Both the position numbers and the translations under genes were made by a program. From Guillardia theta CCMP2712 (Eukaryota > Protista > Cryptophyta): 64,000 nt of DNA. Below the pieces are notes generated by a model. It saw nothing but the letters and a program-made list of their open reading frames with translations. It was not told the origin of the DNA and ran no database searches. Positions 1 to 41,030 of the stretch are shown one piece after another. The stretch covers positions 83,252 to 147,251 of the forward strand of contig NW_005434662.1 in NCBI RefSeq assembly GCF_000315625.1. Reading direction: 5' to 3'. How positions within the stretch are numbered: the first letter of the stretch is position 1; the number at the start of each line of letters is the position of its first letter.

Positions 1-699
1 TTCCTGTTGTTTGACTTGTTCGGACCTGTCATCTCATCAGTTCTTTGACACGTGGACCCACTTCAAAGTTGAACTTGTGTTGTTGTTTTATTCTTTGCCT
101 TCAACACCATCGCCTCCAGCATCATCTCCATCTCCTTCATCATCTTCATCATCTCCTCCCCCTCCTCATCATCATCATCATCTCTCGTGTTTGTCTCATT
201 CTCGTTTTCCTCCGCATCTTTCATCTCATTTCTCTTCTCAGAGGCCACGCATGGTCAGCCTCCCAACCTGTCCAGCGAAGACAAGGTACCATCCCGCCCT
301 CGCCCTCGCCCTCGCCCTTGTTGTCGTCCGCCTCATCCTTGTGCTGCTGCTGCTGCTGCCTTACCTCTCACGTGCTTGCAGAAGTTTTCGCGTGCTGGTC
401 TCAATCGAGCCCTGATGAGGAAGAGCGTGCGGGTGAGAACCTTCTCCTTCCCTGTTCCTCTCCTCGTCCTCTCCTCCTCCCCTGCTCCGCTCACCCGTTG
501 CCGCAGATCAAGGTCTCCTCTGCAACTCCCACCCTCCTCCCCAGCCTCAACTGAGACCAAGCTCCGCCGCCAGCTCCTCCTCCTGCGCTTGCCCTACTTG
601 TTTGCTATGAATGTGTGTCGTACAATAAATCTCCTTGTTTGGTATGAATCCAGCTGAACTGACGGCACGTATGCTCTCCTCCTAACTTTCTCGTTTCTT

Positions 700-2185: not shown

Positions 2186-2617
2186 AACGAAGGCGACGAG
2201 GGACTGCAGAAAGTCCGCGTAAGAAGAGTGAAGGAGCGATGAGGAGAGGGAGTGATGCTGAGATAGAACGGGAGATGGAGACTAGAACAGGAGGGAATGA
2301 GCAGTAGGGTAAACATGGCATGGATCCTGTTGCATCTACGTCTCTTCCCTGGTATCGACATCATCGAACACCCACCGTCCAGCACTTTTTCACCTCTCTC
2401 CACTTGGAGCATATGTAAAGTTATGTTTCTCCCACCACTGCTTGCTCTTTGTCGCTCAGATCCAGTACCTTGTAATACACTGCTTCCTGGTGTTCCTAAT
2501 TTCTCCCTGTTTTTTGCTCTCCACTTCTTCTGACTCGTCATGGCATACATTGTAATTTATTCCCCTCCGCCCTCCCTCTCCCTTCTCCCTCCCCTCCCCT
2601 CCCCTCCCCTCCCCTCC

Positions 2618-2684
2618 CCTCTGCTCTGCTCTGCTCTGCTCTGCTCTGCTCTGCTCTGCTCTGCTCTGCTCTGCTCTGCTCTGC
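2618..2684. repeat. (CTCTG)n microsatellite preceded by (CTCCC)n
   Basis: Direct tandem pentanucleotide repeat, about 13 copies. Confidence 0.95.
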
Positions 2685-2794
2685 TTGTTCATCTCACCGC
2701 CATCATCGGCCATGTCGGCTGTCGGCGCCTCCCGAACTTCATTTTCTCATACAGATGGTTCTGCAACGGTTTGTAACCGCCAATCAATAAGCTT

Positions 2795-3745
2795 GACTCG
2801 TTGCTCACTGCCGTACTGCGCCGCGGCGGCCCGGGCCCGGTCCGAGCACTGCGCGCGCCACGCGGCCCGCGGTCGGATCGGACTCCCGGTGACCCGGGCG
2901 TCCCCGGAGTCCGACAGTCACCGTGTCACATCATGCCGGGCGCGGCCCCACTCCGGGCGCGGGAGCGGGGCCTCCCCCCGGGCCCCGGGACTCGCCGGAG
3001 GGCGGGCGGGCGCTCCCGAGCATGCCAGCCTGGCCCAGTACCCCGGAACTGGGCCCGGCCCGGCACCGGGGCTTCAACTGGCCCCCCGGCGGCGCGACTT
3101 GGCCCGTTGAAGCTCCGACTCGACTCGGCGCCGTGACGGTTCGGACCGTACGGTGCCAGGGCATTTACTCAAATCATTGCCATCGGAATGGACTCGAATA
3201 CCGTTTACGTTTGCCAAATTCAGGCCCCGGCGCCATGGCATAGTAGGCGGCGCATGCCAGCCTGAACCACTGAGCCGCGCCTCGGCCCCGAGTTAGTGCC
3301 GCAGTGCCGTCACGTCCGAGTCTTTGAACCGTTCGGATGCCAGTGAGCAAATTGGTTGTGGCAGCCCGGCAATGAGCCACTGCTAAAGAGACCGGCCGCA
3401 TCATGGTGCACGGTGCCTGCGGCACCCCAGCCGGGCGCGCCCGCCCTGCCCGCCCTGCCCGCCCTGCCGCATCATGGCAGGCCGTACTCGCCGGTAGTAC
3501 GGTCGGCGTATCACCGTTCGGTCGCCCCCGCGGTGACTCGCTGGGATCGGCACTGATGATGTCGGACCGTGCGGGCGAGCTTCTTCAGGAGCCTGACCGG
3601 GTACCTCCGAGATTTCATGAGCAGCGATGATCCGATTGTCGGACGGTTCGCACTTCGGAATGCCGCTTAGCCTGACTCCGACTGAGCCTCGGAGGCCGCG
3701 CTCGGAGGCCGCGCTCGGAGGCTCTTTCACTCAGGCCGCTGTCAC
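2795..3745. repeat. GC/palindrome-rich intergenic island 1
   Basis: Very high GC, dense CCGG/GGCC/GTAC/TGACTC words, local duplications (GCCCGCCCT x3, GGCCGCGCTCGGA x2), no credible ORF. Confidence 0.6.
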
Positions 3746-6365: not shown

Positions 6366-7986
6366 ATGACAGGATACGAAGAGCGAAGTGCATCCAACTC
6401 GATTTCAAGTTCACATTCAATGCCATCGCAGCATCATACGCCAGCTGTTGATGAGTACAAGCACATACAGATGTTGTTCAAGGACCAAGACACAACTGAA
6501 GGCTCAGTGAAAAGCGAGAGGGACCTGGAAATAAGTATCAGACAAGATACTCCTGTTGGACCGCAGGCCACTGAAATCACGGAGACATGTTCTCAGGAGC
6601 AGAGAATCCCTTCTCTGCAGGGGACGGACTTGTCTGGCTCAGGCCATCCACTGCGTGCTTATCCCTTACATCATGTGAAGCAAATAATCCCCCCATCAAA
6701 GCAGACTGCTGCTGCCTTGCAAGTAAGCTCATCCTGGTCGTCGAATCCCGGTCGCAACACTGCGGGGTTGGCCAATGGCAACTCGTTTGTGAGCTCAGGA
6801 AGCTCGAAGGGGAGATCCGTGCAGGGGTACGCGTTTGAGGACATGTCGTTTGACAGGTATTCCACCAAGTCCACGTCGAACTGCTTCTCGGCATTTCTAT
6901 TCAGGAGGAAACAAAACACTTCAAGATTGAACCTCGGGTTGTCGGCACCTCCCAGACACAGTGTTTCGCTTCACGGTGCTGTTCATGAATCATTCGATGA
7001 TGGAGCTTCGGATGCGGGCACGCTCGAATTGTATTCTAACGACATCAATTGGATATGCAGAACACGATCTGTGGGGGTGAGCTTCTTTTGCTGGTGTTGT
7101 ACATATGCTTGTCTGACATTGTATTCTGCAGCTTTGTGAAGTGCATCGAGTTATTGTCAAAGGGCAACAAATGATTGCCAAAGTGCCAAAAGCGAGGCTC
7201 CCTTTTGAGCTTTCATTGCGCGCACAGGCAGACATTCACAACGAAGCCAAGCTCATCTCGACAATCCCTCCCCACAGAAACATCGTACAATTCCAAGGGT
7301 TCATTAACGACGAGTTGGCAGGGCAGCGTCCAGTTGTCCTCACAGAGATGGTTTCGATGACAAGTCTTGCAGACTTCCTGCAGGAGCGACAGACCCTCTA
7401 CGGCGAAGGTCAATGGAGGCCCAATCGAATGGTCTCTCTGGGATGGTGTATCGGGATGGAAAAGGGCCTTGCATTCTTGCACAGTCGCCAGCCCCCTTTG
7501 ATCCACAGTGATCTGAAACCAGCAAATCTGATCCTCTCTGAAGACCTGACCAACATCAAGATCGCCGACTTTGGCCTCGGCTCATCGGTAGATCACTCGG
7601 AAGCTCGGGATCCCAGTGTGTGGGAGAGACAGCGAAACTTTGGCACGGGGACGTACCGTTACATGGCACCTGAGCTTGCCGATCGCGCTTGTGCTCCCAA
7701 TGAGCAGACAGACGTGTACAGCAGTGCGATCATCATGTGGGAGATCTGCACGGGCATGATGGCGTTCTCTCATGCCATCCACCTGCTGGCCGATGAGAAT
7801 GTGAGGAAATTTCTTCGACCTCCTGTTGATAGGATTGGATGGGTGCCGCTGATCAACGTGATTGAAGCTGCTTGGCATCAGGAGCCCTCTCGACGTCCGA
7901 CAGCCTCAATGATTTGCGATCAACTTCAAGGGCTGATCAAGCAAAGCCAGACTCGCTTTCAGAGGTTTCGATCTTGTTTCTTGTAA
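6366..7986 (+). CDS. Tyrosine-kinase-like (TKL) protein kinase, two exons (intron 7077-7131)
   Basis: IAKVPK, HNEAKLISTIPPHRNIVQF, HSDLKPAN, IKIADFG, GTYRYMAPE, DVYS, RRPTA. A phase-0 GT-AG intron joins ORFs 6366 and 7141 in frame. Confidence 0.9.
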
Positions 7987-23267: not shown

Positions 23268-23567
23268 ATGGATGTCGTTGTTTAGACGAGGTCTCTCACG
23301 TATAAGAAAACATTGTCAAATCAGATGTGATTGACTTCCCTTCGACAATGTCACTTCAGTTCTACTCCCCTTCTCTTGACATGTCGCACTTCTAGCACCC
23401 GTACATGATTGTTTCATGCTCATTCCCTGACATGGCTCGAAAGTGCAAGCAGGCATTTGTTCCTGTCAGCGGAAAACAGACAGGCAACGCCTTGCAGGGC
23501 TCTTTACGGAAGTTTTGAGCCCTGTCGGGCAATTAGGCCCGGAGCCAAACTCCATTAGCTCTCAGAA

Positions 23568-26500
23568 ATGGCAGGAGCAGGAGGGAGGCGCAAGGGCTCG
23601 ACGAGCTCGCTACCACAGCTTCAGGAAGAAGGCTTGTCGCCCGATCCGTCCATGTACACCACCTTCACTTCCGATGTCTCCCGGCACTCCAAAACTCTCA
23701 GCGTGTCCAACTTGTCTGCTATCAGCAGCCCTTCCAGCGCTCGTTCCATCAACGTCTTCCGATACTTCATGTCTCCTCGCCCAGACTCTCCCAAGGTCTT
23801 GAGCATGCGCCATGACGAGGAACTGACGCCCCTGCAGGCCATGGGCAGCGCGTTCATAGGCGACGATTTCGAGGCCTCTAAGAGGCAGCAGAGGTTGAAG
23901 CTGCTGCTGCTCATCCAGTGCTGACGCTACGGCAGCACCAGCGAGGTCGGGGGGGACTGGGTTCAGCCGACCCCCAGCAACCCACGAGACTTGTTCGACA
24001 TCAGCAAGACGCAGACGCAGTCGATGCTGGGCAAGGAGAGGCGGTCTAAGGTCAGCCGGGGATCCAATGGGAGGAGAGGAAGAGGATGATTCTCATGCAG
24101 TTCCCCGTCTACAACAAGCAAAGGGCATCCACACCCTTCATGCCCAAAGGTGCGCCTGCTTCTCACTCTGTCTCGTCTCATCTTGCCTCTTGTGTCAGCT
24201 CGGAAGCCGTTGAACCTCATGGAAGGAACTCTCAGGCGAGGTGACGGGAGCACCATGCGAGCCAGCCAATCGTAAGCGACTCGCTCCCCTCCTGTGCCTT
24301 CAGCTCCTGACAGCTCGTCAGGGTCATCAAGCCTTCGCATCACAGGGAGCAGGCAGGTAAGCAACTCGACCGACTCGTTGCCCTGCCAACCTGGTGCTGC
24401 AGAGGCTCTCAGCTCAAGGAGGGAAGAGACTCATCGCTCGCTCCCCTACATCGTCGTGGATCCGATCGCCAACAAGAAGGCTGACCGGATCCTAAGGGCC
24501 ATCAGGCATCATGACTACATCGTCCAAAGCCCGCAGCACAGCAAGGTGCCCACACGTGGAGATGCGCGAGCTGAGACTAGAACATGCAGGCTTACGCTAT
24601 CAGCGAGCGAGGTTATGTCGAGAAGCATGACAGAGGGCTTGCAGAGTTTGAAAGCTTGTCTGACCTGGGCTTCAACATGACATTGTATTCCCTTGCTTGC
24701 AAGGTGAGATTCATGTTTGCGAGAGATGTCTCTGCTCCATGTGACAGGAGACATCTCAGTTGCCATTATTTCGTCACTTCAAAGAATACAAAGCCTTTCG
24801 CTGGTGGGATAGAGCTCTGAGGAAGAGAAAGTTTCGAGATCGAATGGTAGCCCGCAATGATGAGGAGCATGAAGCGCTGATGTGCGGCAGAGGCGAATAG
24901 AGAAGCTCTTCCTGCAGTCTCGTCGAGAGTATCTTGCATGCATGCAGCTAGTCAACGACGAGTGTGTCAAGGTCACTCTCGACCTGTCCGTCGCTCTCTC
25001 ACTCGCTTCTTGCAGCTCAGCTTCAGCCTTCTTGACGAGGGGCCGCTGGTGCCTCACGCAGGTGCTGCTGCTGCTGCTCTCTAGCGAGGCTGATGCGAGG
25101 CAGGTCTGTCGCTAGAGAGCCTGACAGAGGAAGTGGGTCAAAGGCGGGAGACGGTAGAGGAAGCGGTTGAGAACCTCCGACTGAAACTCTCAGGTGACGC
25201 TCTTGCCCTTGTCTGTCCTGACCTGCGGCCTCAGACTACCTCGAGAGCTTCTTCACCTCCATCTCCAGTCAGTTCGCCATCTCAAAGCTGCGAGAAGTGT
25301 ACAAGAGGAACAGGCGAGGCGACATCGAAGAGGCTATCAGCATCGCTTCCGAAGACATGCACTGCTTGGGCAGATTGTACGCGCTTGTCGAAAACATTCT
25401 CTGTGAAAACGTCATTCGAATGAACATCAATGAGATCCAACGAATTGTCAAGCTGTTTCACAACCAAGATGGAGTGCTGCAGATGGATGCTTTCATGAAA
25501 CTGGACCAGGAGATTGAAGTTGGTGACATCTCTGCTCTGCTTGTTGGGAAGCAACCAGCTGACTGTGTTGAGCTTGTAACCATTCCATCTCTTGACCATG
25601 TAACAGAGAACTTGACGAAAGCACTTGATAGTTTGCACTTGAGTCTTTCCTATTCCATGAGGCCTTGCATACTTGACGATATAGACAGATTCATTGCAGA
25701 GGAGATATTCAGCAATTATTCCATGTACAAACCTTCTTTCGGCTCGACTGTCGTCAATTCCGTCGATTTCCTTTCGAGTCGTCAGGAGCTTTCGGATATT
25801 CTTGAGTTGTCTATGAAGCAAGTGTTTGCAAGCTGTCAGCAGATAGTTGGAGAGTTCAAACCGATCTTCGCCTTCCTCCTTCATCTCGATGCGGCCACTG
25901 CAAAGTTCCAGGAGAAGGTGGAGACGTTCGAGGTAGAAGTGGAGCACATCGTGCGATGGATCACCACCATCACCCGGCTCATCTCCTCCGACGTCCCGTG
26001 CGGGTCCATAAGGCTCAAGTTTCGAAGGCTCAAGAGCTACTTGCAAGAGAAAGTGCAGAGAGACGTGATGGACAAGCGCTTCGACATCTTCTACAAGTTT
26101 GTTTGTGACTCCATCACCGAGTTGAAGCTGGTTGGAGGGAAGTTCACGCAGAGGCTGGACGTCAACGTGAAGAAGTTCGAAGACGTGGTGGACCTGTTGA
26201 GAGCAATGGAGGAAGTGGACGGAACGATGGAGGAGTACATCTCCCGGGTGTACTCCATCACGAGGATGCGGGAGACTGTGCTGACTCACTTCAACTTCAC
26301 CTCCAAGGCTCTTGAGGATCAGAGCGGGAGGATCAACGTGCCGGTGCTGCAGGTAGCAGTGGCAGAGAAGATTCGAGAGGAGAGGCTGCAGGCGCAGTCG
26401 CGGTTCATGAACCGAAGAGACGCGTACGTCGAGCTGGTGCAGCAGGAGGTGAAGAGATTCCACAAGGCCTGCTCCGCTCTCCTCCAGAGTCTCAAGGCAC

Positions 26501-29500
26501 CAGAGTTTCACGACCTCAAGTCTGCAGCTGAAAGCATCGCCAAGCAACTTGAAGCCAAGAGCAGTCAGGCTAAGGAGCTGCTGGCTCGCAGAGAGATGAT
26601 CTTGTTTGCGGTGCGACACCTCAAGCTTTCAGTCTCTGACGACCAGGCTTCTCTCGAAGACGCTGAGAGCTGGATCGCTGCTCTGACGGCAGTCTGGAAG
26701 GTCTTGGCGAGTTGGAATGAGACGATGGAGAGGGTGATGAACACAAGCATCATGGAGCTGCAGGAGACGCTACAAGTCTCCTCCGTCGAGAGCCTCGTGG
26801 CGCAGGCTGAGCATGTCACCTCCTCCCACCCGTTTCTGCCAGTCACCATCAGGTTCACCCACGAGATCAGGTCCTTCCAAGCTCGATGGCAGGCGTTGAA
26901 GCCGCTGCTGGACTCGGCGATCACGAGCGACAGCCTGGAGTCGATCTTGCAGGGGAAGGGAGTGCGGATGTTGATGCCGACCAACCGGCTGACGTTTGCC
27001 ATGCTCATGGAGAAGAAACTGCTGGAGGACGACGAGCAGATCAGCAGCATCCTCAGCGCTGCGAGGAAGAAGGGGGACTACTCCTCCAAGCTCGACCTCC
27101 TGCGCAAGTCCGTCAAGACCTGCAAGCTTCAGCTGTGCCGGGGCCAGGGAAACCTGTGGGTCAAAGACGCAGAGCGAGTGAGGACGCTGCTGCAAGACAA
27201 TCAGAGCTTCTTCCGGTGGGTCAGCGAGATGAAACGCGGGGAGAAAGACCAGCTGTCAAACGTCTCTGAGCAGAACCTCGAGTCTCTCGCTTCCCTCACC
27301 CTCATCCACAAGTGCCAGGACCTCTGGTGCTGCTTCCGCATCCTCCGCCACGTCAAGAGCGACGAGCTGGAGCCCTTCCTCGAGGCTTTCCTGGGAGTGG
27401 AGGCTCTGTGGACGTCTTGCCTGGAGGATCTGGGGCACAAGACAGACATCATCTGGCTATCGGAAGTGAAGTTGGAAGATCACCTGCGGATTCAAGAGAT
27501 CGAGCAGAAGTTCCAGACCCTCCGGCCCTGCCTCGACATCCTCCACCGCATCATCTGCAAGCACTTCAGCAGACTTGTCACGCTCAAGCCGAGAGAGGCA
27601 GTCAGCCTTTACGCCTTCTTCCTTGAGCCTGGTCCCTCCCTCCCTCCCTCCCTCTGCCGCAAATGCTTTCCGAACTTGACGGGGATCGAACTGAAGGATG
27701 ACTTGCAACCAGCGCGAGTGCATTGCGAAGACGATGAAGTCTTGGTCTTGGATGAAAGCACATGTCAACTCAACACGACAGATGTCAAGATAAGCAACTT
27801 CTACCACCAACTCAAACATGCCGTCAAGGTTGCAATCTTCCAGGCGGTAGAATCAATCTTACATTCATCCAATGTAGATGATCTTTTCACAAATCACACA
27901 TTGCAAAGCATCATGATAGCCATGAGGCTAAATTTAACGGAACATTACCGTACGAGTGGGAAAGAGGAACTAGAAAGTCACATTCTTGATACCATGAAAG
28001 GTTTGGCGACATATCAGTCTGATGGCGAGGTGAGGAGAAGTTCGAGAAGAAAGGTTGCAAACTGCATGATGTTGCTGATGGAATGGAGGGACATGGAGTA
28101 TCAAGACATAGCGGATCATCAGTTTCTCTATGGAATTGTTGACCAGCAGATTTCTGTGTCTTGCGGCAAGTACACCATCAAGTATTCTTTCAACTACGTC
28201 AACGAGCATGTCGAGGTCTTGCTCACCGCGAGCACCAAGAGGATCCTGCAGAAGATGTTTGCGAGCCTCAGCTCTCCCTCCCTCCTCTCCCTCGGCAGGG
28301 CAGCAGAGGGTGAGCGGCTGATCAGACGAGTAGCTTCCATGTGCGGGTGTAACAGTCACGTGTACGACTGCATCATGCACGCCAAGACAGAAGAGCTGCT
28401 GGCCTGCGTGCGAGGGTCGATGGAGATGGAGGAGCTGGTGTGCCTGAAGCACGCGCACTTCCTCCCCTCTCCTTCCCTCGCAGCTCTGGCCAAGACGATC
28501 TTCCAAACATTGACATCTCCGTTGCAGACCCCAGAACCCTTCTCTCACCACGTGCGACCGCAGGTCTACCTGCTCTCTGACCAGCCACTCTCCTCGTCAG
28601 CCTTGCCGATCGAGATGCGGGAGACGCTGAGGCCTGTGGACGGAGTCTGCTGGAGGCAGGACAAAAGGTTTCTCTTCCACCTCTTCCTCAAGTCGTCAAA
28701 CCCGCGCGTGCCCGACGTGGTGGTCAGCAAGATCGAGCAAGCTCACAGCCTGGTGCAGCTCCTGGCGATGGAGCAGGAGCGGCAACGAGTCAACATCAGA
28801 TTCGTGAGAGTCTTGTGCGATGCAGTCGCCGCCAAGTGCCTCGAAGGCGCGACATCGCCGAGCTCAGAGGAGGGTCAGGTCGAGCTGGCGTTGAAGGCTT
28901 TCTTGCAGAGCTTGAGGCTCTTGTTGAGCACACAATCCTACGAGCGATGCTGCCTTGGCATTGAAGCAGCGATGAACTACTCCATACCCGAGTCCAGCGA
29001 TGCGGGGCTGTACGAGGGTATCAGGACATTGAGTGTAGAGGAGCCGTTTGCCTTCACAGAGACGTTTGTTGAGCGATGCGTCAGCTTATACCACTGCGTC
29101 ACGTCGGATGTCAGGATGACTCTGCTCTCTGGGGCGACCAAGGCAGGCAAGACGACGAGCATGGAGGTGGTGAAGAAGATGATGCTCTCGATGAGTCAGA
29201 CCAATGACCGCAAGAGCTACGGGGGCTGCATCAGCACCACCGTCATGCCCTTCTCCTTCCCCTATCAAAGTCAATACTTCTCCCCCAGCTGCGGGCCACC
29301 TGGAGGGATCGAGAGCATGGAGGTGCTGCACGATTACATCAGTCGCTTTCTCGATCGCCCGGTGGACGAGAACTTTCCTATCGAGAGCAGGTGGATGATC
29401 ATCGATATGCCTTCAACGCTGCAGCTGGAGGTGTTGGCCGACGGTCTAGACCAGCACTGCTTCAGCAGAGACTTCGCGGGAGGGGGCATGAGACCGAAGC

Positions 29501-32500
29501 TGCTGGTGGAGACGGATGAGATGGGAAGCGCCTCCCCCGCCACCATCAGCCTGCTCAACGTGCTGCACTACGAGGAAGGAGTGGTGGGCTGGAGAGAGTA
29601 CTTCCACCAGTGGATGAAGACGGTACAGAAGCAGCTGGATGACAAGGTTGTCAATGAGCTGAACCACCTGGTGGAAAGCCTCTTCCCTGAGATCGAGACG
29701 TTCATACGGCATAACTGCCAGCTCTACTTGTACATGTCCACCGTCAACGTCTGCAGATGCTTCTGCAGTATCCTTCACTACCACATCTTCCTCGGCAAGG
29801 CTGTGCCCTACAAGCGGTCCATCTCCTTCTGCCGCTCCTGCTTCATCTTCGCCGTTGCATGGTCGTGGGGCAGTTTGCTTCAGGTCCAGTCTCGCGGGAA
29901 GTTCGCCGCCACCATCAAGCAGATGGTTCTCGAGCACGACCTGCTTTCCGACGCCGAGAGCGGGCTGGTTGACGAGCTGTGGAACGTGTACGTGTCGTTT
30001 GAGACGATGAAGCTGAGAAAGTTCGACGAGATGGGAGAAGACATCGTAGCAGAAGAGAAGATCTCGTACGAGCGAGACACTGCTCTTATCATCCGAACCC
30101 CCGTCTTGCGAGTCTGCGACTACCTGTGGAACATGTTCAGGTTCCAGCAAGACAGCGTCTTCATCTACGGGGCTGAGAGCGAAGGCAAGACAACTCTGAT
30201 GACCTTCATGGCGTCCAACAGGAGGAGGTACGAGGCGGACTCGCAGGTGTCAGGGACCAGGTTGACGTCCTCCACCACCCCTCTAGAGTTCTGCAAGTGG
30301 GTCGAGAGCGAGGCGAGCCCGAGCTTCGCGGTGTCGAAGAAGATCCTGCTGGTCATCGACGACGTGCATGTGTCTCTAGAGCGCTGCGGGGAGACGTCGT
30401 ACATCTCCGAGATGCTGAGGAGCGTCCAGCTGTCGCGAGCGTTCTTCAAGGCTGACTCGTTCGAGGATGAGAAGAGGTTTCAAGCCGTTTGCACCACCCT
30501 CATCGGCGACCTCCGCTCGCTCACCCGCAAATCCGATCGCCTGCTCACGAGCTTCTTCCACCTCGAGATTCGATTTGCGTCCCTTCCCAACCTCCATGGC
30601 ATCCTCTCGCAGAAGGTGTCACAAGCTGAGATCTGGAGGTTCCCCAAGCTCAGGCCATACCTGGACAAGTTCACGTTCGCGCTCATGTACGTCTTGAACG
30701 CAGCCGAGCAGACCTTCACCTCGGGCCTGAGCTCGTCAAAGCGTGTGCTGCTGACGTGGAACGTGGACCAGGTTGTCACCGTCATGCAGTCCTTCAACAA
30801 CCTCAAGCTGAGGAGCGACAAGGACATTGAGTTCGGCCTGCAGTACCTCTGGCACGAAGCGTCTCGAGTCTTCCTCGATCGGCTGCTGGGCTCAGAGGTG
30901 GAGCAGGAAGTGGGACTTCGGGTGAGGGAGTGCTTTGTCAAGGCGCTGGGGAGTCAGAACAAGCGGAACATTCGGATCGCCTGCGAGGCTCAAGTCTACT
31001 TCGTGACTCTCCCCGAGCTCAAAGTCAAGGACACCGGCGACTCCAACCGTCGGGCTTCCACCAAAGTCGTGTCGAGGAGCTGGGAAACGTTGGAGCTGAC
31101 GGGAAGAGACATGTTGACAAGAGCTGAGAACACGCTGACGTGCTCGCGTGATTGCTCGCACCTGCTCTTCCTTGACAACCTTGTCAAGCACCTCAGTCAC
31201 GTCCTGCGCGTCCTCCGGCCGGACTCGAGGATGCGATGCTGCGTCATGGCTGGACCCAGAGAGGCGGGGAAGGAGGAGGTGCTGCGGATGGCCGCGAGGA
31301 TGTGCCACTACGAGATCTGCTTCGAGACAGACAGCAACGGGCTTGACGTACTGCAGGAGCTCAAGGTTTCCCTGCACCACCGCGAGCACAAGCTCTTCGT
31401 GCTGCAAAGCGACGGGCTCTTGCTTCAGAGCGTGCACGGAGAGTACGTGAGCAAGCTGATCAAGGGACAAGGGCTGGAGCGATGGGAGGCCCTCGGCAGC
31501 CGCCACGTTCGCATCGCCATCACGATGAACTTTGTGGAGAGTGAGGAGGTGGTCCGGGTGCCCGAGCAGCTGGTCAAGGTGCTGCCGTTCGCCTCGGTCT
31601 CGTGGTGCAGAGGCTGGTCGGACGAGTCGCTGCGATCCTTTGCTAGCCAGCAGACCCTGAAGGTGTCGAGTACGTGCAGCACACCTGAGGTGATTCACGA
31701 CCTGCATAAGATCTTTCAGCGAGCTACGATGCGCAAATTCTCGTTGAGCTCGAAGCAGCTGTCGTGCCTCGACCCCCTAATGTTCACCTTGGTACACGTG
31801 TTCAAGTACATCTTCTCAGCGCTGCAGGAGAGGTTCGCGTCGAGAAAGACCACCATCAGGCAGGCGCTGGAGACCTACCAGAAGCTTCAGGAGCTTCAGA
31901 GCAGCGTGGAAATGGAGTATGACAACCAGAAGAAGATTGTCAAGCAGACGTCTGCCGCTCAGAGCAAGTGGCGAGATGATACAATGCAGTTCAGAAAGAT
32001 TGTCCAACGAGCTCGCAAGATAGCCGAGGACGAAGAGATCGAGATGCTGCGATCTGTGCTGGAGGGCGATGCGCCGGGCCCCGAGCTGTCAAGAGAGTTC
32101 TATCAAGCTCAGATCCAGCTGCAGGCAGCTACAAAGGCTGTCGCCAACTTATCAGAGGCGCACTACATGCAGCTGGAGCTGGTGCAGGGCCATGAGGAGC
32201 TGCTGGAGTTGCTGCATGAGGCCTTGTGTGCCTGCCTCAGAATCCCCTACGAGCCCTTTGAGAGCGACCGGCTGAACCACCTCAAGTCGCTGTGCCCCCA
32301 GCTGTCGGAGAAGATCAGCAGCTTCGAGCTGCAGGCGATGAGCATGCATGACCTGCAGAGGCTGCGCAAACTGTCGTCAAACAAGCGCTTCATCCCCGAG
32401 AAGTTCTTCGTCATCAACAAGGCGGCCGGCGCTCTCGTGCACTGGGTGAGATCCGTCGAGCTGTTGGGGCGGCTCAACGAGTGGATGAATCCGAACTCGC

Positions 32501-35500
32501 ACACCAACCAGCATCAGTCCCTGGATCAAGTGCAGCGCATGGCGCGACTGCCGCTCATGACCATGAACCAGGTCGAGTCGGAAGTTGAGAACGCGCGGGC
32601 GACGCATCTGAATGCGATCAGAGAAGAGTCGGAGGCGAAGGAGAAGATGCAGAAGCTGCGGAGAGTGTTGGAGTCTTGCAGCCTTGTCCTGGAGATTCTA
32701 GCGGATGACCAGAACTATTGGAAAGAGGAGGAGGAGGAGTTGAGCAGGGAGGAGCAGAACAGCTTTGGAGATGCCCTGCTCTACGCTTGTTTCCATACTT
32801 ACTTGGGTCTCTTTGACTTCCAGGGCCGACAGAGGCTGTTGGATGAGCTCAAGCAGCATCTGCTCCAGAGCCGAATCGAAGTTTCGAGTGAGTTCAGCAT
32901 CGATAACTTGTTGAAGCATATGGTTGCTATCTCCGAGTCCTTCGTCAAGTTTCCGCAGAAGAGCAGCTCGGTGAAAGAGCTTGTCTTCACCGTTTTCAAC
33001 TCCCCCAAGATACCTCTGTTCGTCGATGCCTCCGGCCTCATGTGGTACTTCATGTCGACCTACTGCCGCGCTTCAGTCTTTCGCGGCAACGACGCGTCCC
33101 TCGAAGACTTCTTGACGCTCGCCAAGGACAAGGCCGAGCTCGTCCTGCTGTCTGACGTGGAGGTGGAGAGAAGGACCCTGCTGTCGCTGCTTGAGCGAAG
33201 ACCAGACCTGCGACCAGAAGCGTTTGGGCTGGGGGAGAAGCAGTACGCCCTCTTCTTCTTCTCACGGCTTGACCTCCGGTCACTCGACTGGCGCAAGGAC
33301 CTGACGCACTTCACCGTGTGCTGCTGTGAGTTTGACCAAGAGGCGACTGAGGAGCTCATGTCGGACCTCGTCCTCGAGACGCTGGACCCCTCGGCCAAGA
33401 GGGGATGGATGGACTATCACCGCCAGCTGTCCGTCCTGCAGAATCAGCTGCGAGGGAAGATCGAGGCGATCCGAGACCTCATCTGCCACTCGGACTTCAT
33501 CGCTGACATTCAGGAGGCTGAGTCAAGCGCAACCCTCGACCTCTGCCAGTCCGTCAAGCACCTCCGAAAGCAGATGCAGGACTACGTGGTGGCGAGTGCG
33601 GAGAAGCTCAAGAACCGAGACTACTTGTCAGCTTTCTCTCGCAACTGCTCCAGCCTCCTCCGCGCAGCGCCAGAGACGAGTAGGATAACAGGTAAGACTT
33701 GGAGTCACTAGAGGAGTTGCTTGACTGTTGCCTTCAGGTGTCTTCGACTCGTCCATCCATCAGCTTAGACAAGCCTTGGGGTTGATGGACAGTGTGGATT
33801 CTATGGAGTACGGCACCAAACACTTCTCCGACGTAATGAGCAAGCAGACAGATGAGATCGTAGCCGCCTGGCTGTCCCTCACCTTCCTCGCTCTCCCCGA
33901 CTCTCAGTTCGGTCTCGTCTCCCTCGTCTGCCTCGCCCACGTGCATGGCCGTCCCTTCAACAAGGTTTGGGCCCTGTGGCAGGCGGCGACTCGAGCGCTC
34001 CACGAGGCGGGCGAGGCGGACCTGTGCTCCCTGGGCCAGAGGGAGTGCGGACCCCAGCAGATGTTCAGCAGGGTTGGATGGAGGGTCTTGCGGGAGATGA
34101 AAGAACAGCTGGGGGTGCATTATGACGCGTTGGTGATGAGCATAGAGCACGACCCTGGCAGGTGGAGGCGATACGTAGAGAGCCAAGCTCTCTCCCTCGA
34201 CTCCTTCCCCTTCAAGTCCTCCGGCTCCATCTCGATGCCTCTGGAGAAGGTGGTGGTGTGCGCCATGGCTCTCATGCCGCACAGGCTCAACGAGCTGCTT
34301 GACGTCTTGACGGGGGAGACTCAGACGAGGGTGTGGAGGTTCATGGAGGACAATCGGGTGAAGTTGAGCCAGTACATGGCCAGACTTGATCTCAACGTCT
34401 CCACCTTTCGTCATGGGGCATCTGCTCTTGCCTATACTCGCATCATTGCTCAACAGCTGCACAGCCTTGACCCGACAAGCTCCTCGCCTGCTCGCCTTGA
34501 GCTCCAGCATGAGGGCGACACCGACGGGGGCAGCAGGAAGGAGGAGGGCAAGCACGACCGTTGGGTGGTCACCGAAGCTCCGGATGCGACTTGGAAAGGA
34601 GAGGGAGGCTCAGGGCGGGTGAAACTTGTGCGGGTATGGGACTATACGACCTCGGCCTCGTTCAAGCAGCTCAAGAACTCCATGACGCTGAGCGACGGGA
34701 TGATGCTTCTACCCCCTGCTCTCCTGCAAGCCATGGTCCATCAGTCCTGGGCTCGACGAAGCGATGCTCCCTTCTGGAGGTTCGCCGTTGGACTCTCTTA
34801 CTTCCTGTCTCTGCTTCTACAAACATGCGGAAAGATGCAAGCTCAACATCTGTTCGACATGGTGCCGATCAAGCATGTGCATGTCACGTTGCTGTGTGAG
34901 CGCATGGCTGAATGGCAGGGCGACAAGGTGAGGCTTGTGATGCCGAAGCTCATCGGGAGTCACTTGAGGCATCAGGTCGAGGAGCTTGCTGACAGCATCC
35001 TCCTCCATGTCGTGAACTTCTTGGGCGACGTGGCCATGACGTGGCAGGCTCAGCAGCTCGAGGGTCTCTACCGCAGCATCATATGCGAGAAGCTCTTCGG
35101 AGAGAGTGAGAGCTTGACGGTGATGCTTGCGTCCTCGTGCGCGCCCTGTGATGCCTTGAAGCAGGTGCTGGACAACAAGATCGCAGCTCCAGACGCACAT
35201 GTCGCCTCTCAGTCTGCGATGATAGCCTATGCTCTCACCTTACCTCCGTTGCACCCTCGGACGTTGGACAGTCTCACGATCAAGGTAAGGTCGGTGCTTC
35301 AGCCCGCTCCTCACACTGCTGGTCAGTATGAGTGGAGCACGGAAGAAGCCATCCTCCGAGCCCTCCCGACGCCTCTCGTCCATCTCGCCAACCTCAACAT
35401 CTCGCGTGTCTTGTCCAAGCTGGACACACTCGTCATGCCCAACCCGCTGGTCGGTCTTGCCTCCCTCTTGTCGTCCCTCATGTCCTTCCTTCAGACTCAA

Positions 35501-36817
35501 GGCCGCATCCGGGTGCTCGGGAGGGAGGTAGAGGTGGGGCCCAGCTAGGATCGAGCTGACTCGCGTGAAGGGTGGGGGATTGCAGAGCAGAACAGCGCTG
35601 CTCATGTACGAGGCCTTCGTGGGAGACGAGATGCTGGCGCACAACACAGTCGTGGAGACCATCACCGTATCAACCGTATCAATGTCATGTCGCTCCGCTT
35701 GACTCAATGCATGCAGGAGAGGATCAAAGCCTGCAAGCTGCTGCTGTCCGGACGAGTCTGACAAGCCTGAGCTTGACAGTCTTCACTGTTGACGAGAGTT
35801 GCAGGCAAAGTTGAGTGAGAGCAGCGGCTTGGTACAAGCCCTTGCTCGAGAGAGGTGCCTCCTGACCCGTCTTGTCCCTCTTGACTTTGTGGGGATGGCA
35901 GGGTTCCGGCGAGTTGGGATGTAGGGGCGAACAAAGTTGGCATGCCTATCAGCAGGTTTCTGGAGCAAGTGAAGGAACGAGGAGGCTGGCTTCAAACTTG
36001 CATCAGCAACCTCAACCAAGCGGTGAGAGCTGCTCAAGTCGCTCTAAAGTGAAACCTCTTCTCAGAGCATACACGCCAACTCACCTGCAGTCCCCTTGCA
36101 CCTGCACTATGAGCCGGGGCACCTCTTTGACATGTTGCTCGCCCTCAATCACAACTCCGACAGGTCGAGGTCAAGTTTCATGGTTGCTACTGACACCTTG
36201 CGCTAGAAGCGACGCCGCGGAGTCCGACATCTCGCTCATGGTCCTTCCTGCCTTGGCCTCTTTCTGCTCGCTCACGCCTAGCAGTTGTATCCCCTCAAGG
36301 ACCTCGATGATCTAGCTCGGTCGTGGCCGCAGGCTTGCGTGCTTGCTCTAGTGTACTTCAGGTGCTGTGACGGCTCTCTGCTTGCAGATTGACGAAGAAA
36401 CAGGCGGACCAAGTTCGATGCTGACGAAGGAGTGCTGCGAAGTGTTGTTAACGAGCAAGACGCTTCATTGCATCCTGCCGAGAGAGTTTGCGTCATGGTT
36501 TGCTCGCCTTGAGCTCGCTGGATGTGACAGGCATGTCTCAGGTCTGCAAGAGAAGCTCGATGCCTTTAAGGAGGCAGATGAAGAAGGAAGGGCTGAGCTG
36601 GTGCAGCATCAGGCTCTATCGCTACCCGCTCCACCCGCGGGTATGCCTCCTGCTTTCCTTGCATCTGGTGACAGTGCGGCAGCTCTACGGGCATGCTTCT
36701 TTGCAGTACGTGTGCAACCTTGTCGTGAGGACGGACTTGCATCCCTCTCGCGTCGATGAGCTCGGAGTCTGCGCCTTCCTGTCGTCGACCATGCATGCAG
36801 GTGATGGGCTACAGTGA
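23568..36817 (+). CDS. Highly divergent dynein heavy chain (about 4000 aa); giant exon 25235-33691, next exon from 33738; outer ends approximate
   Basis: Dynein landmarks in the correct order: linker (ICKHFSRLVTL, CRKCFPNL, YSFNY..VLLTASTKR), degenerate AAA1, AAA2 GATKAGKT and ETDEMGSASPATIS, AAA3 GAESEGKT/VIDDVH, AAA4 GPREAGKE, coiled-coil stalk with AAGALVHWVRSV, GDALLYACFHTYLGLF, AAA5 IPLFVDASG. Confidence 0.88.
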
Positions 36818-38911: not shown

Positions 38912-39121
38912 GCTCTGTCTCTGTCTGTTCTTGCTCTGTCTCTGTCTGTTCTTGCTCTGTCTCTGCCTGTTCTTGCTCTGTCTCTATCTGTTCTTGCTCT
39001 GTCTCTGTCTGTTCTTGCTCTGTCTCTGTCTGTTCTTGCTCTGTCTCTGCCTGTTCTTGCTCTGTCTCTATCTGTTCTTGCTCTGTCTCTGTCTGTTCTT
39101 GCTCTGTCTCTGTCTGTTCTT
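38912..39121. repeat. 21-bp minisatellite x10 (GCTCTGTCTCTGTCTGTTCTT) with an 84-bp higher-order period
   Basis: Variant units recur at copies 3 and 7 (GCC) and copies 4 and 8 (ATC). Confidence 0.95.
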
Positions 39122-39419
39122 GCTATGTTTCTCTGTCTCTCCGTCTATGCCTCACCTGCTCTCTACACTATCTTCTACTGATAGATCTCAACATGAATTT
39201 CTTGTTGATGTCCTCCTTGAGAATTCCTGGCGTTATGTCTTGCTCATGTGGAAGTAGTGGAATGTCCGAACATTCGAAGGAAATTTGTTGTGTACTAGAC
39301 AGCACAGTGGTCGCTCCGAAATCATCTTTCTCACTAACCCTCACTCATTTTTTGTCGAAAACATCAGTTTCTCACTATGTTTTGCAGATAAACCGGCAAG
39401 TGAAACAGCGATTGTAGGG

Positions 39420-41030
39420 ATGTTTGCACGTACATTTCTCCGAGCAGTCCCTGCTCGCGCTTTCTCTGCTGCTTCGCAGTTTGCAAGCAAGAGCATGAGC
39501 AAAAAGTGGTCCTGGAAGGCAAGAGCTGCTGTTTTGGCTGCAGGTGGCTTCACAACTTATGCTGTTGTGGACTATGGCCTTCATCCCCGTCCCTCTAGCG
39601 AGGTTGTGGATGATCTTCTCCTCACTAAGCCCGCAACTGAGAGGAAGGAGCGTCTGATTGTGCTCGGATCTGGCTGGGGTGCAGTCGCTCTGCTTGACAA
39701 GATCGACCCGTTCAAGTACGAGGTCATCTGTATCTCTCCTCGCAACCACTTCGTCATGACGCCGCTCCTGCCCTCTGTCACCGTGGGAACCATCGAGACC
39801 CGCACTGTCGTTGAGTCTATCCGTTCCATCTGCCCCCACGTCAAGTTTATCGAGGCCGAGTGCACTGGACTGAACCCGCAGGGCAAGACTTTGACCTTCA
39901 CCTCTTCCAAGCGCCCCAGCAGCAGCAGGGAGGTGCAGGACAGCGCCAAGACTCGTCCTGAGTTTCAGATGGCGTATGACAAGCTCGTGGTGGCGGTCGG
40001 AGCTGAGAACAACACCTTCAACACCCCCGGAGTTGAGCAGCACGCTCACTTCCTCAAGGAGATCATCGACGCCCGCAGAATCCGTGCTGCTATCGTCGAT
40101 GCCTTCGAGAGCGCTTGTAACCCGGCTCAGACCGAGGAGGAGAGGAAGCGTCTCCTCAACTTCGTTGTCGTTGGTGGAGGGCCCACTGGCGTTGAGTTTG
40201 CCGCCGAGCTCGCTGATCTCCTTCACGAGGATTTGACCAAGTCTTTCCCTAAGCTGAAGAACGATGTCAAGATCCGCCTCATCGAGGCCACCGACAAGGT
40301 TCTCGGCATGTTCGACTCCAAGGTTTCCGCCTTCACCGCGCAGACTTTTGAGAAGGAGGGTATTGAGGTTCTGGCGAATACTTTTGTCAAGGAGGTGAAG
40401 CAGAAGGAAGTTCTCGTGCAGAAGAAGGGAAGCAAGGAGATCGAGTCCATCCCCTCGAGCGTTGTCGTGTGGGCAACCGGCATCAGGAGCAGGCCCATCA
40501 CCAATAAGATCAGGGAGTGCATCGGCGTGAAGGAGCAGACCAACCCCCGCGCTCTCCTTACCGACGGATTCCTCCGTGTTAGGGGGGCTGACGGCGTCTA
40601 TGCTATGGGCGATTGCGCGACCATCGACGGCAAGCCCCTGCCTGCGACTGCTCAGGTGGCGTCACAGGAGGGCAAGTACCTCTCCAAGTACCTCAATGGC
40701 CTTCCTACCGCTCACGAGGACTCGTCTGTCTTGAACGCCGTGCGCAAGATGTACTGGAAGGTGGCCGGCGGCTTTACCTCCGAGCCCTTTGAGTATGCTC
40801 ACCGTGGCTCTCTTGCTTACACTGGCGGGGACTCAGCGGCTGCTGACTTCAAAGGCGCTATGAACGGCTTCTTTGACTCCATTGGCATGTCTGTGATGAC
40901 TGGCAAGGCCACCAACATCCTCTGGCGCAGCTTCTACATGAGCGAGCAGCTGTCGATGCGCACCAAGGCGCTCCTGGCTGTCGACTGGGCCAAGGCCAAG
41001 GTGTTCGGGCGTGACTTCAGCCGCTATTAA
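39420..41030 (+). CDS. Mitochondrial type II (alternative) NADH dehydrogenase, intronless CDS
   Basis: Mitochondrial presequence MFARTFLRAVPARAFSAA; LIVLGSGWG, FVMTPLLPS, YDKLVVAVGA, VVVGGGPTGVEFAAE, VYAMGDCA, LPATAQVASQEG, FGRDFSRY; no EF-hand insert. Confidence 0.95.
   Translation: MFARTFLRAVPARAFSAASQFASKSMSKKWSWKARAAVLAAGGFTTYAVVDYGLHPRPSSEVVDDLLLTKPATERKERLIVLGSGWGAVALLDKIDPFKYEVICISPRNHFVMTPLLPSVTVGTIETRTVVESIRSICPHVKFIEAECTGLNPQGKTLTFTSSKRPSSSREVQDSAKTRPEFQMAYDKLVVAVGAENNTFNTPGVEQHAHFLKEIIDARRIRAAIVDAFESACNPAQTEEERKRLLNFVVVGGGPTGVEFAAELADLLHEDLTKSFPKLKNDVKIRLIEATDKVLGMFDSKVSAFTAQTFEKEGIEVLANTFVKEVKQKEVLVQKKGSKEIESIPSSVVVWATGIRSRPITNKIRECIGVKEQTNPRALLTDGFLRVRGADGVYAMGDCATIDGKPLPATAQVASQEGKYLSKYLNGLPTAHEDSSVLNAVRKMYWKVAGGFTSEPFEYAHRGSLAYTGGDSAAADFKGAMNGFFDSIGMSVMTGKATNILWRSFYMSEQLSMRTKALLAVDWAKAKVFGRDFSRY

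What the first reader, a model, noticed from the sequence alone, without database searches (positions are those of the whole stretch)
23568..36817. Apparently full-length dynein heavy chain with degenerate AAA1 catalytic motifs (candidate pseudo-motor)
Seen: every dynein module is present in order, but the AAA1 Walker A position reads LGRAAEGERLIR (~28291-28326) instead of GPAGTGKT, and Walker B reads CLKHAHF (~28441) instead of CFDEFNR. Flanking AAA1 landmarks survive (CGCNSHVYDC, LPIEMRETLRPV). The P-loops of AAA2 (GATKAGKT, ~29131), AAA3 (GAESEGKT, ~30169) and AAA4 (GPREAGKE) keep their lysine, and the stalk/MTBD-like segment remains. Established: AAA1 is the essential hydrolysis site for dynein motility. 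Inference: the 2800-codon uninterrupted frame argues for selection, so this may be a non-motile structural, tethering or brake dynein of the flagellum or cytoskeleton, or a lineage-specific dynein class.
Basis: partly seen in the sequence, partly recalled or inferred. Interest (0 to 1): 0.85.

Follow-up and report, generated by a model that had tools for sequence, protein, structure and literature searches.

The report
Catalytically dead dynein heavy chain, Guillardia
This is a real, expressed and conserved gene of the alga Guillardia theta for a dynein motor protein whose main ATP-burning site has been completely lost, so it most likely serves as a non-motile flagellar component, a kind of protein only recently recognised in animals.

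Summary
The window is from Guillardia theta CCMP2712. The gene is GUITHDRAFT_102984: 4034 aa, 26 exons, 23568-36817 on the + strand.

Against canonical dyneins, the AAA1 P-loop is deleted. The Walker B box, the invariant Arg after it, sensor I and the AAA2 arginine finger are all replaced. AAA2 and AAA3 keep their P-loops, AAA4 keeps its lysine, and the linker, stalk and microtubule-binding domain fold are kept.

It is not a pseudogene. Two independent runs hold about 12.5-kb contigs that splice out all 12 N-terminal introns. Collinear orthologues on environmental contigs share the AAA1 loss. pN/pS between two close orthologues is 0.29 (p = 5e-10).

Conservation is inverted relative to normal dyneins. 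The tail and linker are the best conserved parts and AAA1-AAA2 among the worst. The tail resembles single-headed inner-arm dyneins, with DNAH6 the best named match. Motor-domain phylogeny is unstable.

The most likely role is a non-motile axonemal scaffold or regulator. Orphan dyneins of G. theta were catalogued in 2016, and non-motile dyneins (DNAHX, DNHD1) are known. I therefore rate this a new member of a known kind, of moderate interest.

The parts
23568..36817 (+). Whole coding region of GUITHDRAFT_102984 (4034 aa, 26 exons, introns 41-58 nt)
   Evidence: Exact exon-by-exon match of P0001 to the window; identity of P0001
23568..25192 (+). Exons 1-12 (N-terminal tail); all 12 introns between them and the giant exon are confirmed as spliced
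   Evidence: Contigs of runs X1 and X3 skip 12 GT..AG intervals of 41-56 nt that equal the predicted introns; the DNA run X7 keeps them
25234..33693 (+). Giant exon 13 (residues 373-3192), uninterrupted frame
23568..26655 (+). Tail (residues 1-846), the best conserved part of the family; resembles tails of single-headed inner-arm dyneins
   Evidence: 31-47% identity to L001/L002; family tail/linker profile (residues 1-1000) hits almost only single-headed inner-arm chains in PDB, at collinear positions; its one two-headed-size hit (8glv_Cn, 4625 aa) is weak (18.8 bits) and lies in the linker part
26656..27831 (+). Linker (Pfam DHC_N2, residues 847-1238)
   Evidence: DHC_N2 47 bits, above the cut-off
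28108..29037 (+). AAA1 module (residues ~1331-1640): fold kept, catalytic motifs lost; Pfam AAA_6 is not detected in G. theta but is detected in the orthologues
   Evidence: Alignments; AlphaFold model matches only dynein motor domains, E 1e-21; AAA_6 hits in L002 and P0059
28291..28326 (+). Walker A position of AAA1: LGRAAEGERLIR, with the P-loop GPAGTGKT deleted (6-residue gap, no GK[ST])
   Evidence: in the model only one residue lies between strand 1 and the following helix
28441..28461 (+). Walker B position of AAA1: CLKHAHF in place of CFDEFNR (Asp to Lys, Glu to His, invariant Arg to Phe)
   Evidence: role of the motif from PMC10835030
28570..28638 (+). Sensor-I region of AAA1: LLSDQPLSSSALP in place of ITMNPGYAGRxELP, followed by the surviving landmark IEMRETLRPV
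29131..29154 (+). AAA2 Walker A GATKAGKT, conserved as GxxxxGK[ST] in all family members
29533..29556 (+). AAA2 motif SPATISLL in place of SPATVSRC: the arginine finger that reaches into the AAA1 site is Leu
   Evidence: identity of the PATVSR arginine finger from PMC10835030
29659..30021 (+). Dynein AAA lid domain (residues 1848-1968)
   Evidence: Pfam PF17852, 40.5 bits
30169..30192 (+). AAA3 Walker A GAESEGKT
30346..30372 (+). AAA3 Walker B LLVIDDVHV (DD[VI]H conserved in the family)
31252..31275 (+). AAA4 P-loop GPREAGKE (GPxGxGK in the family; a non-Ser/Thr residue after Lys also occurs in canonical axonemal dyneins)
   Evidence: PMC10835030 quotes GVGGSGKQ for an inner-arm chain
31771..32757 (+). 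Stalk: coiled coil 1, microtubule-binding domain, coiled coil 2 (residues ~2552-2880)
   Evidence: Gap-free alignment of both coils; model with helices of about 100 and 83 residues around a small helical bundle; Foldseek hits are dynein stalks, E 1e-10
32152..32508 (+). Microtubule-binding domain core (residues 2679-2797): AAGALVHWV helix and flanking Pro kept; helix-1 motif KSxxxPP replaced by an acidic helix; net charge -1
33692..33737 (+). Intron 13 (46 nt, GT..AG) that joins the two long open frames
   Evidence: Sequence read directly; exon mapping; not covered by the stretch laid with reads
33295..36817 (+). C-terminal ~975 residues (rest of AAA5, presumed AAA6 and C-sequence), exons 13-26; very diverged
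   Evidence: Only Dynein_C at 21.6 bits, below the cut-off; family profile finds no dynein in PDB; nearest Atlas clusters are Dynein_heavy/AAA_lid_11/Dynein_C at 0.89, a lead only

Best explanation
GUITHDRAFT_102984 is a functional, transcribed gene of Guillardia theta. It encodes a full-length dynein heavy chain paralogue whose main ATPase site (AAA1) has been completely dismantled.

**Shown**
- The AAA1 P-loop is deleted.
- Walker B Asp-Glu, the invariant Arg after it, the sensor-I Asn and the AAA2 arginine finger are all replaced.
- The same losses occur in collinear orthologues from uncultured relatives, so the inactivation is old and has been kept under purifying selection.
- The ring, linker, stalk and MTBD folds persist.
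- AAA2 and AAA3 keep nucleotide-binding motifs.
- The tail and linker, not AAA1, are the most conserved parts.

**Inferred**
- The protein cannot run the AAA1-driven powerstroke cycle and is therefore non-motile.
- It descends from a single-headed inner-arm dynein.
- It docks in the axoneme, or on axonemal dynein partners, through its conserved tail.
- Its ring serves as a static, possibly nucleotide-stabilised (AAA2/AAA3) structural or regulatory module, not as a force generator. Its microtubule affinity is probably weakened.
For: - **Identity and gene model:**
- **Dynein homology:** Pfam DHC_N2 and AAA_lid. PDB best hits are DNAH6 at 113 bits, then DNAH1 and DNAH12. The AlphaFold model of AAA1-AAA2 matches only dynein motors at E 1e-21. 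The stalk model matches dynein stalks.
- **AAA1 loss:**. The arginine finger PATVSR reads PATISL. The roles of these residues are taken from PMC10835030.
- **AAA2/AAA3 motifs:** conserved across the family.
- **Expression:** runs X1 (2018) and X3 (2014) hold contigs of 12,539 and 12,465 nt. These splice out all 12 N-terminal introns and show no difference from the window through AAA1. The DNA run X7 keeps the introns.
- **Family:** an exhaustive search finds 23-29% identical fragments that score far above canonical dyneins. L001 and L002 are collinear with residues 196-4023 and 196-3032.
- **Selection:** pN/pS is 0.29 over 3084 codons between L002 and L004, binomial p 5e-10.
- **Inverted conservation:** within the family, tail and linker are 47-69% identical and AAA1-AAA2 36-45%. 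In canonical pairs the tail is 22-28% and AAA1 62-75%.
- **Tail type:** the tail/linker profile hits almost only single-headed inner-arm chains, collinearly. The length of 4034 aa fits that type.
- **Flagellar context:** the genome holds more than 17 canonical heavy chains.
Against: - No localisation, proteomic or biochemical data exist. 'Non-motile' and 'axonemal' are inferences.
- The motor-domain tree is model-dependent. With 45 rows and C20-PMSF the family sits inside the DNAH6/DNAH14 clade (SH-aLRT 98). With 23 rows and LG+G4 it sits outside all inner-arm dyneins. The AU test did not finish.
- The tail matches are weak (11-35 bits per stretch).
- AAA3 keeps GKT and DD, so hydrolysis at another site is not excluded.
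- pN/pS was measured on environmental orthologues, not on G. theta itself. It is highest (0.42) among the long segments in the AAA1-AAA3 one.
- The C-terminal quarter is not verifiably dynein-like by sequence.
- The organisms that carry the orthologues are unnamed.
Confidence: 0.6

Rival explanations
1. It is still an ATP-driven motor, but another site (most plausibly AAA3, which keeps GKT and DD) has taken over as the driving ATPase. AAA1 then serves only as a structural spacer.
For: AAA3 Walker A and Walker B are conserved in all family members, and AAA2 Walker A as well. The linker, stalk length and MTBD fold are preserved. That preservation would be unnecessary for a pure scaffold.
Against: In every studied dynein, AAA1 hydrolysis drives linker remodelling; AAA3 and AAA4 are regulatory (established knowledge; DNAHX paper). 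The AAA1-AAA2 region and the C-terminal part are the least conserved. The MTBD has lost its basic character. One family member has CKS instead of GKS at AAA3.
Confidence: 0.12
2. It is a non-motile dynein-fold protein that works outside the axoneme, for example in cytoplasmic pre-assembly or transport of axonemal dyneins, or on another microtubular structure of the cryptophyte cell.
For: DNAHX is proposed to pair with single-headed dyneins as an inhibited 'phi' partner during transport, not to sit in the arm (PMC11785096). There is no localisation evidence here. The weakly charged MTBD fits a role off the doublet.
Against: The conserved tail resembles tails that dock inner-arm dyneins. Kollmar 2016 argues that orphan dyneins with class-like tails are axonemal.
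Confidence: 0.18
3. It is a decaying 'ghost gene' or pseudogene that merely has not yet acquired stops.
For: The motor is extremely diverged: a stem branch of 4.7 changes per site and Pfam AAA_6 not detected. DNHD1 was once viewed this way (PMC8754002).
Against: The gene has a 4034-codon spliced frame, with a 2820-codon exon free of stops. Full-length spliced transcripts occur in two studies. Intact collinear orthologues exist at 21-30% identity. pN/pS is 0.29, p 5e-10.
Confidence: 0.03
4. The degenerate motifs are an assembly or annotation artefact.
For: None found.
Against: RNA-derived contigs from two studies and DNA contigs from a third agree with the window, with no differences across 23400-29399. 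Four independent orthologous sequences show the same losses.
Confidence: 0.01

Closest known systems
DNAHX, non-motile dynein heavy chain of sea urchin sperm and other externally fertilising animals (Chai et al. 2025, PMC11785096)
   Same: It is a full-length dynein heavy chain with degenerate AAA1 motifs. It is conserved as a subfamily, inferred to be non-motile, and has altered microtubule binding.
   Different: [quoted passage not shown] It is ~5272 aa, with many insertions. It keeps a Walker B box and holds ATP at AAA1. The Guillardia protein is 4034 aa without large insertions. It has an inner-arm-like tail. It lacks the P-loop altogether, so it probably cannot even bind nucleotide at AAA1.
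DNHD1 (Kollmar class 11), the 'orphan/ghost' heavy chain of metazoans
   Same: It is an aberrant heavy chain with a poorly conserved AAA1 that lacks catalytic Walker B residues. It was once suspected to be a pseudogene and is now linked to ciliary function.
   Different: Class 11 is reported to be metazoan-specific. None appeared among the hits of either search.
Orphan dynein heavy chains of protists catalogued by Kollmar 2016 (PMC5100056), including Guillardia theta orphans
   Same: The pattern he describes generally is the same: the tail is alignable to one of the nine classical classes while the motor is strongly diverged. The species was included in his survey.
   Different: That study states that ATP-hydrolysis and microtubule-binding sites were not analysed. 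The G. theta orphans he mentions group near classes 12 and 13, which have outer-arm-like tails, whereas this gene has an inner-arm-like tail. Whether this locus is one of his orphans could not be checked, because the supplements are not held.
Single-headed inner-arm dyneins, DNAH6/DNAH14 group (IAD-5; Chlamydomonas dynein g type)
   Same: They give the best sequence matches in PDB for both motor and tail, have a similar length, and are the placement in the mixture-model tree.
   Different: They have fully intact AAA1 sites with AAA1 as their best conserved part, and basic MTBDs. The tree placement is not robust.

Membership tests
Dynein heavy chain superfamily | Linker domain (DHC_N2) N-terminal to the ring | tested here: met
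   PF08393 at 47 bits, residues 847-1238; also present in the orthologues
Dynein heavy chain superfamily | AAA1-AAA5 modules in canonical order | tested here: met
   Collinear alignments with canonical chains. Pfam AAA_6, AAA_7, AAA_8 and AAA_9 are found in the orthologues. The fold of AAA1-AAA2 matches dynein motors.
Dynein heavy chain superfamily | Antiparallel coiled-coil stalk with a microtubule-binding domain between AAA4 and AAA5 | tested here: met
   The surface chemistry is altered.
Dynein heavy chain superfamily | AAA6 and C-terminal sequence | tested here: inconclusive
   Dynein_C at 21.6 bits, below the cut-off. The family profile finds no dynein in PDB. There is only an Atlas feature lead.
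Motile (catalytically competent) dyneins | AAA1 Walker A GPAGTGKT, Walker B CFDEFNR, sensor-I Asn, and the arginine finger PATVSR from AAA2 | tested here: not met
   All four are absent in G. theta and in four orthologous sequences
Single-headed inner-arm dyneins (IAD-3/4/5) | Tail homologous to that class and a length near 4000-4200 aa | tested here: met
   The tail/linker profile hits almost only single-headed chains, collinearly, though weakly; the one two-headed-size hit is weak and lies in the linker part. The length is 4034 aa.
Single-headed inner-arm dyneins (IAD-3/4/5) | Motor domain nested within the class in a phylogeny | tested here: inconclusive
   It lies inside the DNAH6/14 clade under C20-PMSF and outside it under LG+G4 with fewer rows. 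The AU test was unfinished.
DNAHX subfamily | Derived from the outer-arm alpha chain, >5000 aa with insertions, AAA1 still binds ATP, animals only | tested here: not met
   4034 aa, inner-arm-like tail, P-loop deleted, cryptophyte (definition)
DNHD1 / class 11 | Orthology to metazoan DNHD1 | not tested
   No DNHD1 sequence was obtainable with the tools. The literature calls the class metazoan-specific.
Pseudogene | Disrupted frame, no spliced transcript, neutral evolution | tested here: not met

The most novel reading that the evidence does not exclude
This gene and its environmental relatives form a previously undescribed, protist-lineage class of pseudo-dyneins. The class arose from a single-headed inner-arm dynein, independently of animal DNAHX and DNHD1. 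It lost every AAA1 catalytic element yet kept AAA2/AAA3 nucleotide sites and a conserved tail. Together with at least seven further AAA1-degenerate heavy-chain genes in the same genome, this would mean that non-motile dynein-fold subunits are a recurrent and substantial part of flagellar architecture, not an animal oddity.
Probability: 0.45. Interest if true: 0.65.

Novelty: new member of a known kind. Interest (0 to 1): 0.5.

Why it matters
Dynein heavy chains are normally defined by AAA1-driven motility. Only recently (DNAHX, DNHD1) has it become clear that some conserved family members are non-motile.

This case comes from a cryptophyte and derives from a different ancestral class. It has an even more complete loss at AAA1, including no P-loop. 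That suggests convergent evolution of 'pseudo-motors'.

It also offers a clean natural experiment on what a dynein ring does without its engine: scaffold, assembly template or regulator. The inverted conservation pattern (tail above AAA1) is a simple signature that could be used to find more such proteins.

Tried and rejected
- **Rfam scan of the window:** nothing found.
- **The search of earlier findings near the locus:** nothing found.
- **Close paralogue in the genome:** none. The best hit is a canonical heavy chain at 67 bits.
- **Named full-length orthologues:** word-based searches with the motor and with the better conserved tail returned only the protein itself plus canonical dyneins.
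- **P0059 contig:** no DNA was available for it.
- **AU test:** the test of whether the family can lie outside the single-headed inner-arm clade did not finish in two 300-s runs. A reduced LG+G4 tree moved the family to the axonemal base. I therefore do not claim a class from the motor tree.
- **dN/dS at other divergences:** between G. theta and its orthologues, or between L001, L002 and L003, it is unusable because of saturation (45-65% or lower amino-acid identity). L001 versus L005 are nearly identical and uninformative.
- **C-terminal family profile against PDB:** no dynein hit.
- **Atlas feature searches:** they say only 'dynein'.
- **Long hits without a canonical AAA1 motif:** these proved to be fragments or unrelated aberrant dyneins, not DNHD1.
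- **Locus tag in the literature:** it appears in no paper of the held library.
Full report
**1. What is there**

The window is part of contig 12 of the Guillardia theta CCMP2712 nuclear assembly. A 2804-codon open frame at 25297-33711 on the + strand is the giant 13th exon (25234-33693) of a 26-exon gene. The gene spans 23568-36817, and its conceptual product matches the public protein GUITHDRAFT_102984 exactly. That protein is 4034 aa and is annotated only as 'hypothetical protein'. Introns are 41-58 nt with GT..AG ends.

**2. The observation**

Every quoted string is present at the quoted position. A MAFFT alignment with 14 canonical heavy chains of all main classes anchors them as follows.

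| Element | Canonical | This protein |
|---|---|---|
| AAA1 upstream landmark | LVITPLTDRCY | VLLTASTKRIL |
| AAA1 Walker A | GGAPxGPAGTGKTETxKD | LGRAAEG------ERLIRR (P-loop deleted) |
| AAA1 landmark | VFNCS | VYDCI |
| AAA1 Walker B | CFDEFNR | CLKHAHF |
| AAA1 sensor I | ITMNPGYAGRxELP | LLSDQPLS-SSALP |
| AAA1 downstream landmark | LFRPVAM | TLRPVDG |

The invariant Arg that closes the Walker B motif is Phe. The invariant arginine finger that AAA2 sends into the AAA1 site (PATVSR) reads PATISL. The roles of both residues are taken from PMC10835030.
- The protein has only two GK[ST] strings (AAA2, AAA3) and no hhhhD[DE] string anywhere near AAA1. The refutation 'an intact site elsewhere' therefore fails.
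- Pfam does not detect AAA_6 at all in this protein.
- An AlphaFold2 model of residues 1322-1995 has mean pLDDT 76.5. It keeps the AAA+ fold, with only one residue between strand 1 and the following helix where the P-loop should be. Its Foldseek matches are exclusively dynein motor domains, at E about 1e-21.

**3. The rest of the motor**

- The linker is detected (DHC_N2, 47 bits), as is the AAA lid (40 bits).
- AAA2 keeps GATKAGKT and the Walker B Asp.
- AAA3 keeps GAESEGKT and LLVIDDVHV.
- AAA4 reads GPREAGKE. A non-Ser/Thr residue after that Lys is normal for axonemal chains.
- Both stalk coils align without gaps. The MTBD keeps its helix-6 motif (AAGALVHWV) and the flanking prolines.
- The stalk model shows helices of about 100 and 83 residues around a small bundle. 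It matches dynein stalks at E about 1e-10.
- The MTBD helix-1 motif KSxxxPP is replaced by an acidic helix. The net charge of the domain is -1 to -2 in the family, against +4 to +7 in all canonical chains compared except DNAH5 (-2).
- The last ~975 residues have the right length for the rest of AAA5, AAA6 and the C-sequence. They are recognised only marginally.

**4. Real gene or relic?**

- *Transcription.* Two runs from different studies (2018 and 2014) hold contigs of 12,539 and 12,465 nt. These lie on the gene, skip exactly the 12 predicted N-terminal introns and show no base difference through the AAA1 region. A DNA run keeps the introns. The contig length fits the 12,105-nt coding sequence plus short untranslated ends.
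- *Orthologues.* An exhaustive HMMER search of 1.84 billion representatives with residues 1241-2440 found nine fragments at 23-36% identity and 60-325 bits. Canonical dyneins score below 66 bits. All are gene calls on metagenomic or Logan contigs.
  - Five contigs were fetched (L001-L005).
  - L001 is collinear with residues 196-4023 and L002 with residues 196-3032.
  - All of them, together with P0059, lack the AAA1 Walker A, Walker B, sensor I and arginine finger. All keep the AAA2 and AAA3 motifs.
  - The inactivation therefore predates a divergence deep enough to leave 21-30% motor identity.
- *Selection.* L002 and L004 differ by 53 synonymous and 55 non-synonymous changes over 3084 codons. 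That gives pN/pS 0.29, binomial p 5e-10. By segment it is tail 0.19, AAA1-AAA3 0.42 and AAA4-stalk 0.18.
- The pseudogene and artefact readings are rejected.

**5. An inverted conservation profile**

| Comparison | Tail / linker | AAA1 region |
|---|---|---|
| L001 vs L002, within the family | 47-69% | AAA1-AAA2: 36-45% |
| G. theta vs the others | tail: 31-47% | residues 913-1765 (linker-AAA2): ~21% |
| Canonical pairs of similar depth | tail: 22-28% | AAA1: 62-75% |

The C-terminal part is 40% identical between L001 and L002. Constraint has moved from the catalytic core to the docking part.

**6. Where it comes from**

- PDB sequence matches are best to DNAH6 (113, 106 and 104 bits). Next come DNAH1 (77) and the Chlamydomonas DNAH6-like chain 8glv_Fm (71). 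Cytoplasmic dynein scores only 32 bits.
- A profile of the family tail and linker hits almost only single-headed inner-arm chains, at collinear positions. One weak hit (18.8 bits) is to a two-headed-size chain, in the linker part. The length of 4034 aa fits that type.
- A 45-row tree of AAA2-AAA5 under LG+C20 PMSF makes the family monophyletic (100) on a stem of 4.7 changes per site. It lies inside the DNAH6/DNAH14 clade (SH-aLRT 98).
- A 23-row LG+G4 tree moves the family to the base of the axonemal dyneins, and the AU test did not finish.
- I conclude that an origin from a single-headed inner-arm dynein is likely but not proven. Kollmar 2016 met the same difficulty with orphan motors and relied on tails.

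**7. How it most likely works**

- *Shown.* No element needed to bind or hydrolyse ATP at AAA1 remains. The fold, stalk and AAA2/AAA3 sites remain. The tail is the most constrained part. The gene is expressed and under purifying selection.
- *Inferred.* AAA1 hydrolysis is the step that drives linker remodelling and motility in all studied dyneins (established knowledge). The protein therefore cannot be a conventional motor. It most likely docks through its inner-arm-type tail and contributes a static ring, perhaps stabilised by nucleotide at AAA2/AAA3. It would act as a structural or regulatory element of the flagellum, or as a partner that holds other single-headed dyneins during assembly, as proposed for DNAHX.
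- The acidic MTBD argues against a strong tether or brake.
- The rivals are listed separately: an AAA3-driven motor, a non-axonemal role, a pseudogene and an artefact.

**8. Comparison with the literature**

- Kollmar 2016 surveyed G. theta and lists orphan heavy chains there. He argues that orphans keep class-like tails and are axonemal, but he states that ATP and microtubule sites were not analysed.
- DNAHX (2025) is a non-motile, outer-arm-alpha-derived, animal-only chain that still binds ATP at AAA1. DNHD1 lacks Walker B residues.
- The locus tag appears in no paper of the held library.
- The present gene is therefore a new, more extreme and independently derived member of a known kind.

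**9. Context in the same genome**

Besides more than 17 canonical AAA1 modules (over 400 bits), the genome has at least seven further weak AAA_6 matches on long open frames. Six were read through the Walker motifs. All six have a degenerate AAA1 Walker B, and all but one a degenerate Walker A. The fetched stretch of the seventh does not reach the Walker A position. None is a close paralogue of this gene.

**10. Verdict**

Interest is moderate.

Noticed in passing
G000 contigs C93:135890-136891, C1:346981-347979, C11:65207-66208, C11:130715-131677, C21:288937-289908, C69:99739-100677, C69:420302-421282 (loci L006-L012): At least seven further divergent dynein heavy-chain-like genes lie in the same genome (AAA_6 scores 51-185 bits against >400 for canonical ones, several on open frames of 2600-3900 codons). 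All six read through the motifs have a degenerate AAA1 Walker B (for example CLLHIDK, CYENFHS, LLLEGFI). Five of these six also have a Walker A without Ser/Thr after the Lys, or no P-loop at all. The fetched stretch of the seventh (L012) does not reach the Walker A position. None is a close paralogue of the gene studied.
   Followed up: partly
window 23796-25233 and 33692-36682: All 25 introns of the gene are very short (41-58 nt). They cluster at the two ends of the gene and leave one exon of 8460 nt in the middle.
   Followed up: partly
window 38912-39138: A tandem array of a 21-nt unit (10.7 copies, 94% matches) lies in the spacer between the dynein gene and the next gene.
   Followed up: no
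window 39285-41030 (+) and 7141-7986 (+): The neighbouring open frames encode a type II NADH dehydrogenase (Pyr_redox_2 plus NDH2_C) downstream and a protein kinase domain upstream. Neither has an evident link to the dynein gene.
   Followed up: no
window 25282-26619 (-): A 445-codon open frame lies antisense to the dynein exon. It is most likely a by-product of the composition of the sense frame and was not examined further.
   Followed up: no
P0145 / P0232 (Aphanomyces invadans, 3561 and 4666 aa): P0145, an oomycete heavy chain among the weak hits, lacks the canonical AAA1 P-loop and Walker B strings (its cluster member P0232 was not examined). It may belong to the oomycete-specific classes 14-16 of Kollmar 2016.
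   Followed up: no
L001 21383-22351 (-): A neighbouring gene on the environmental contig that carries the orthologue is 58-78% identical, exon by exon, to a G. theta gene (G000:C32:653031-654141). This is weak evidence that the contig comes from a related organism, possibly a cryptophyte.
   Followed up: partly
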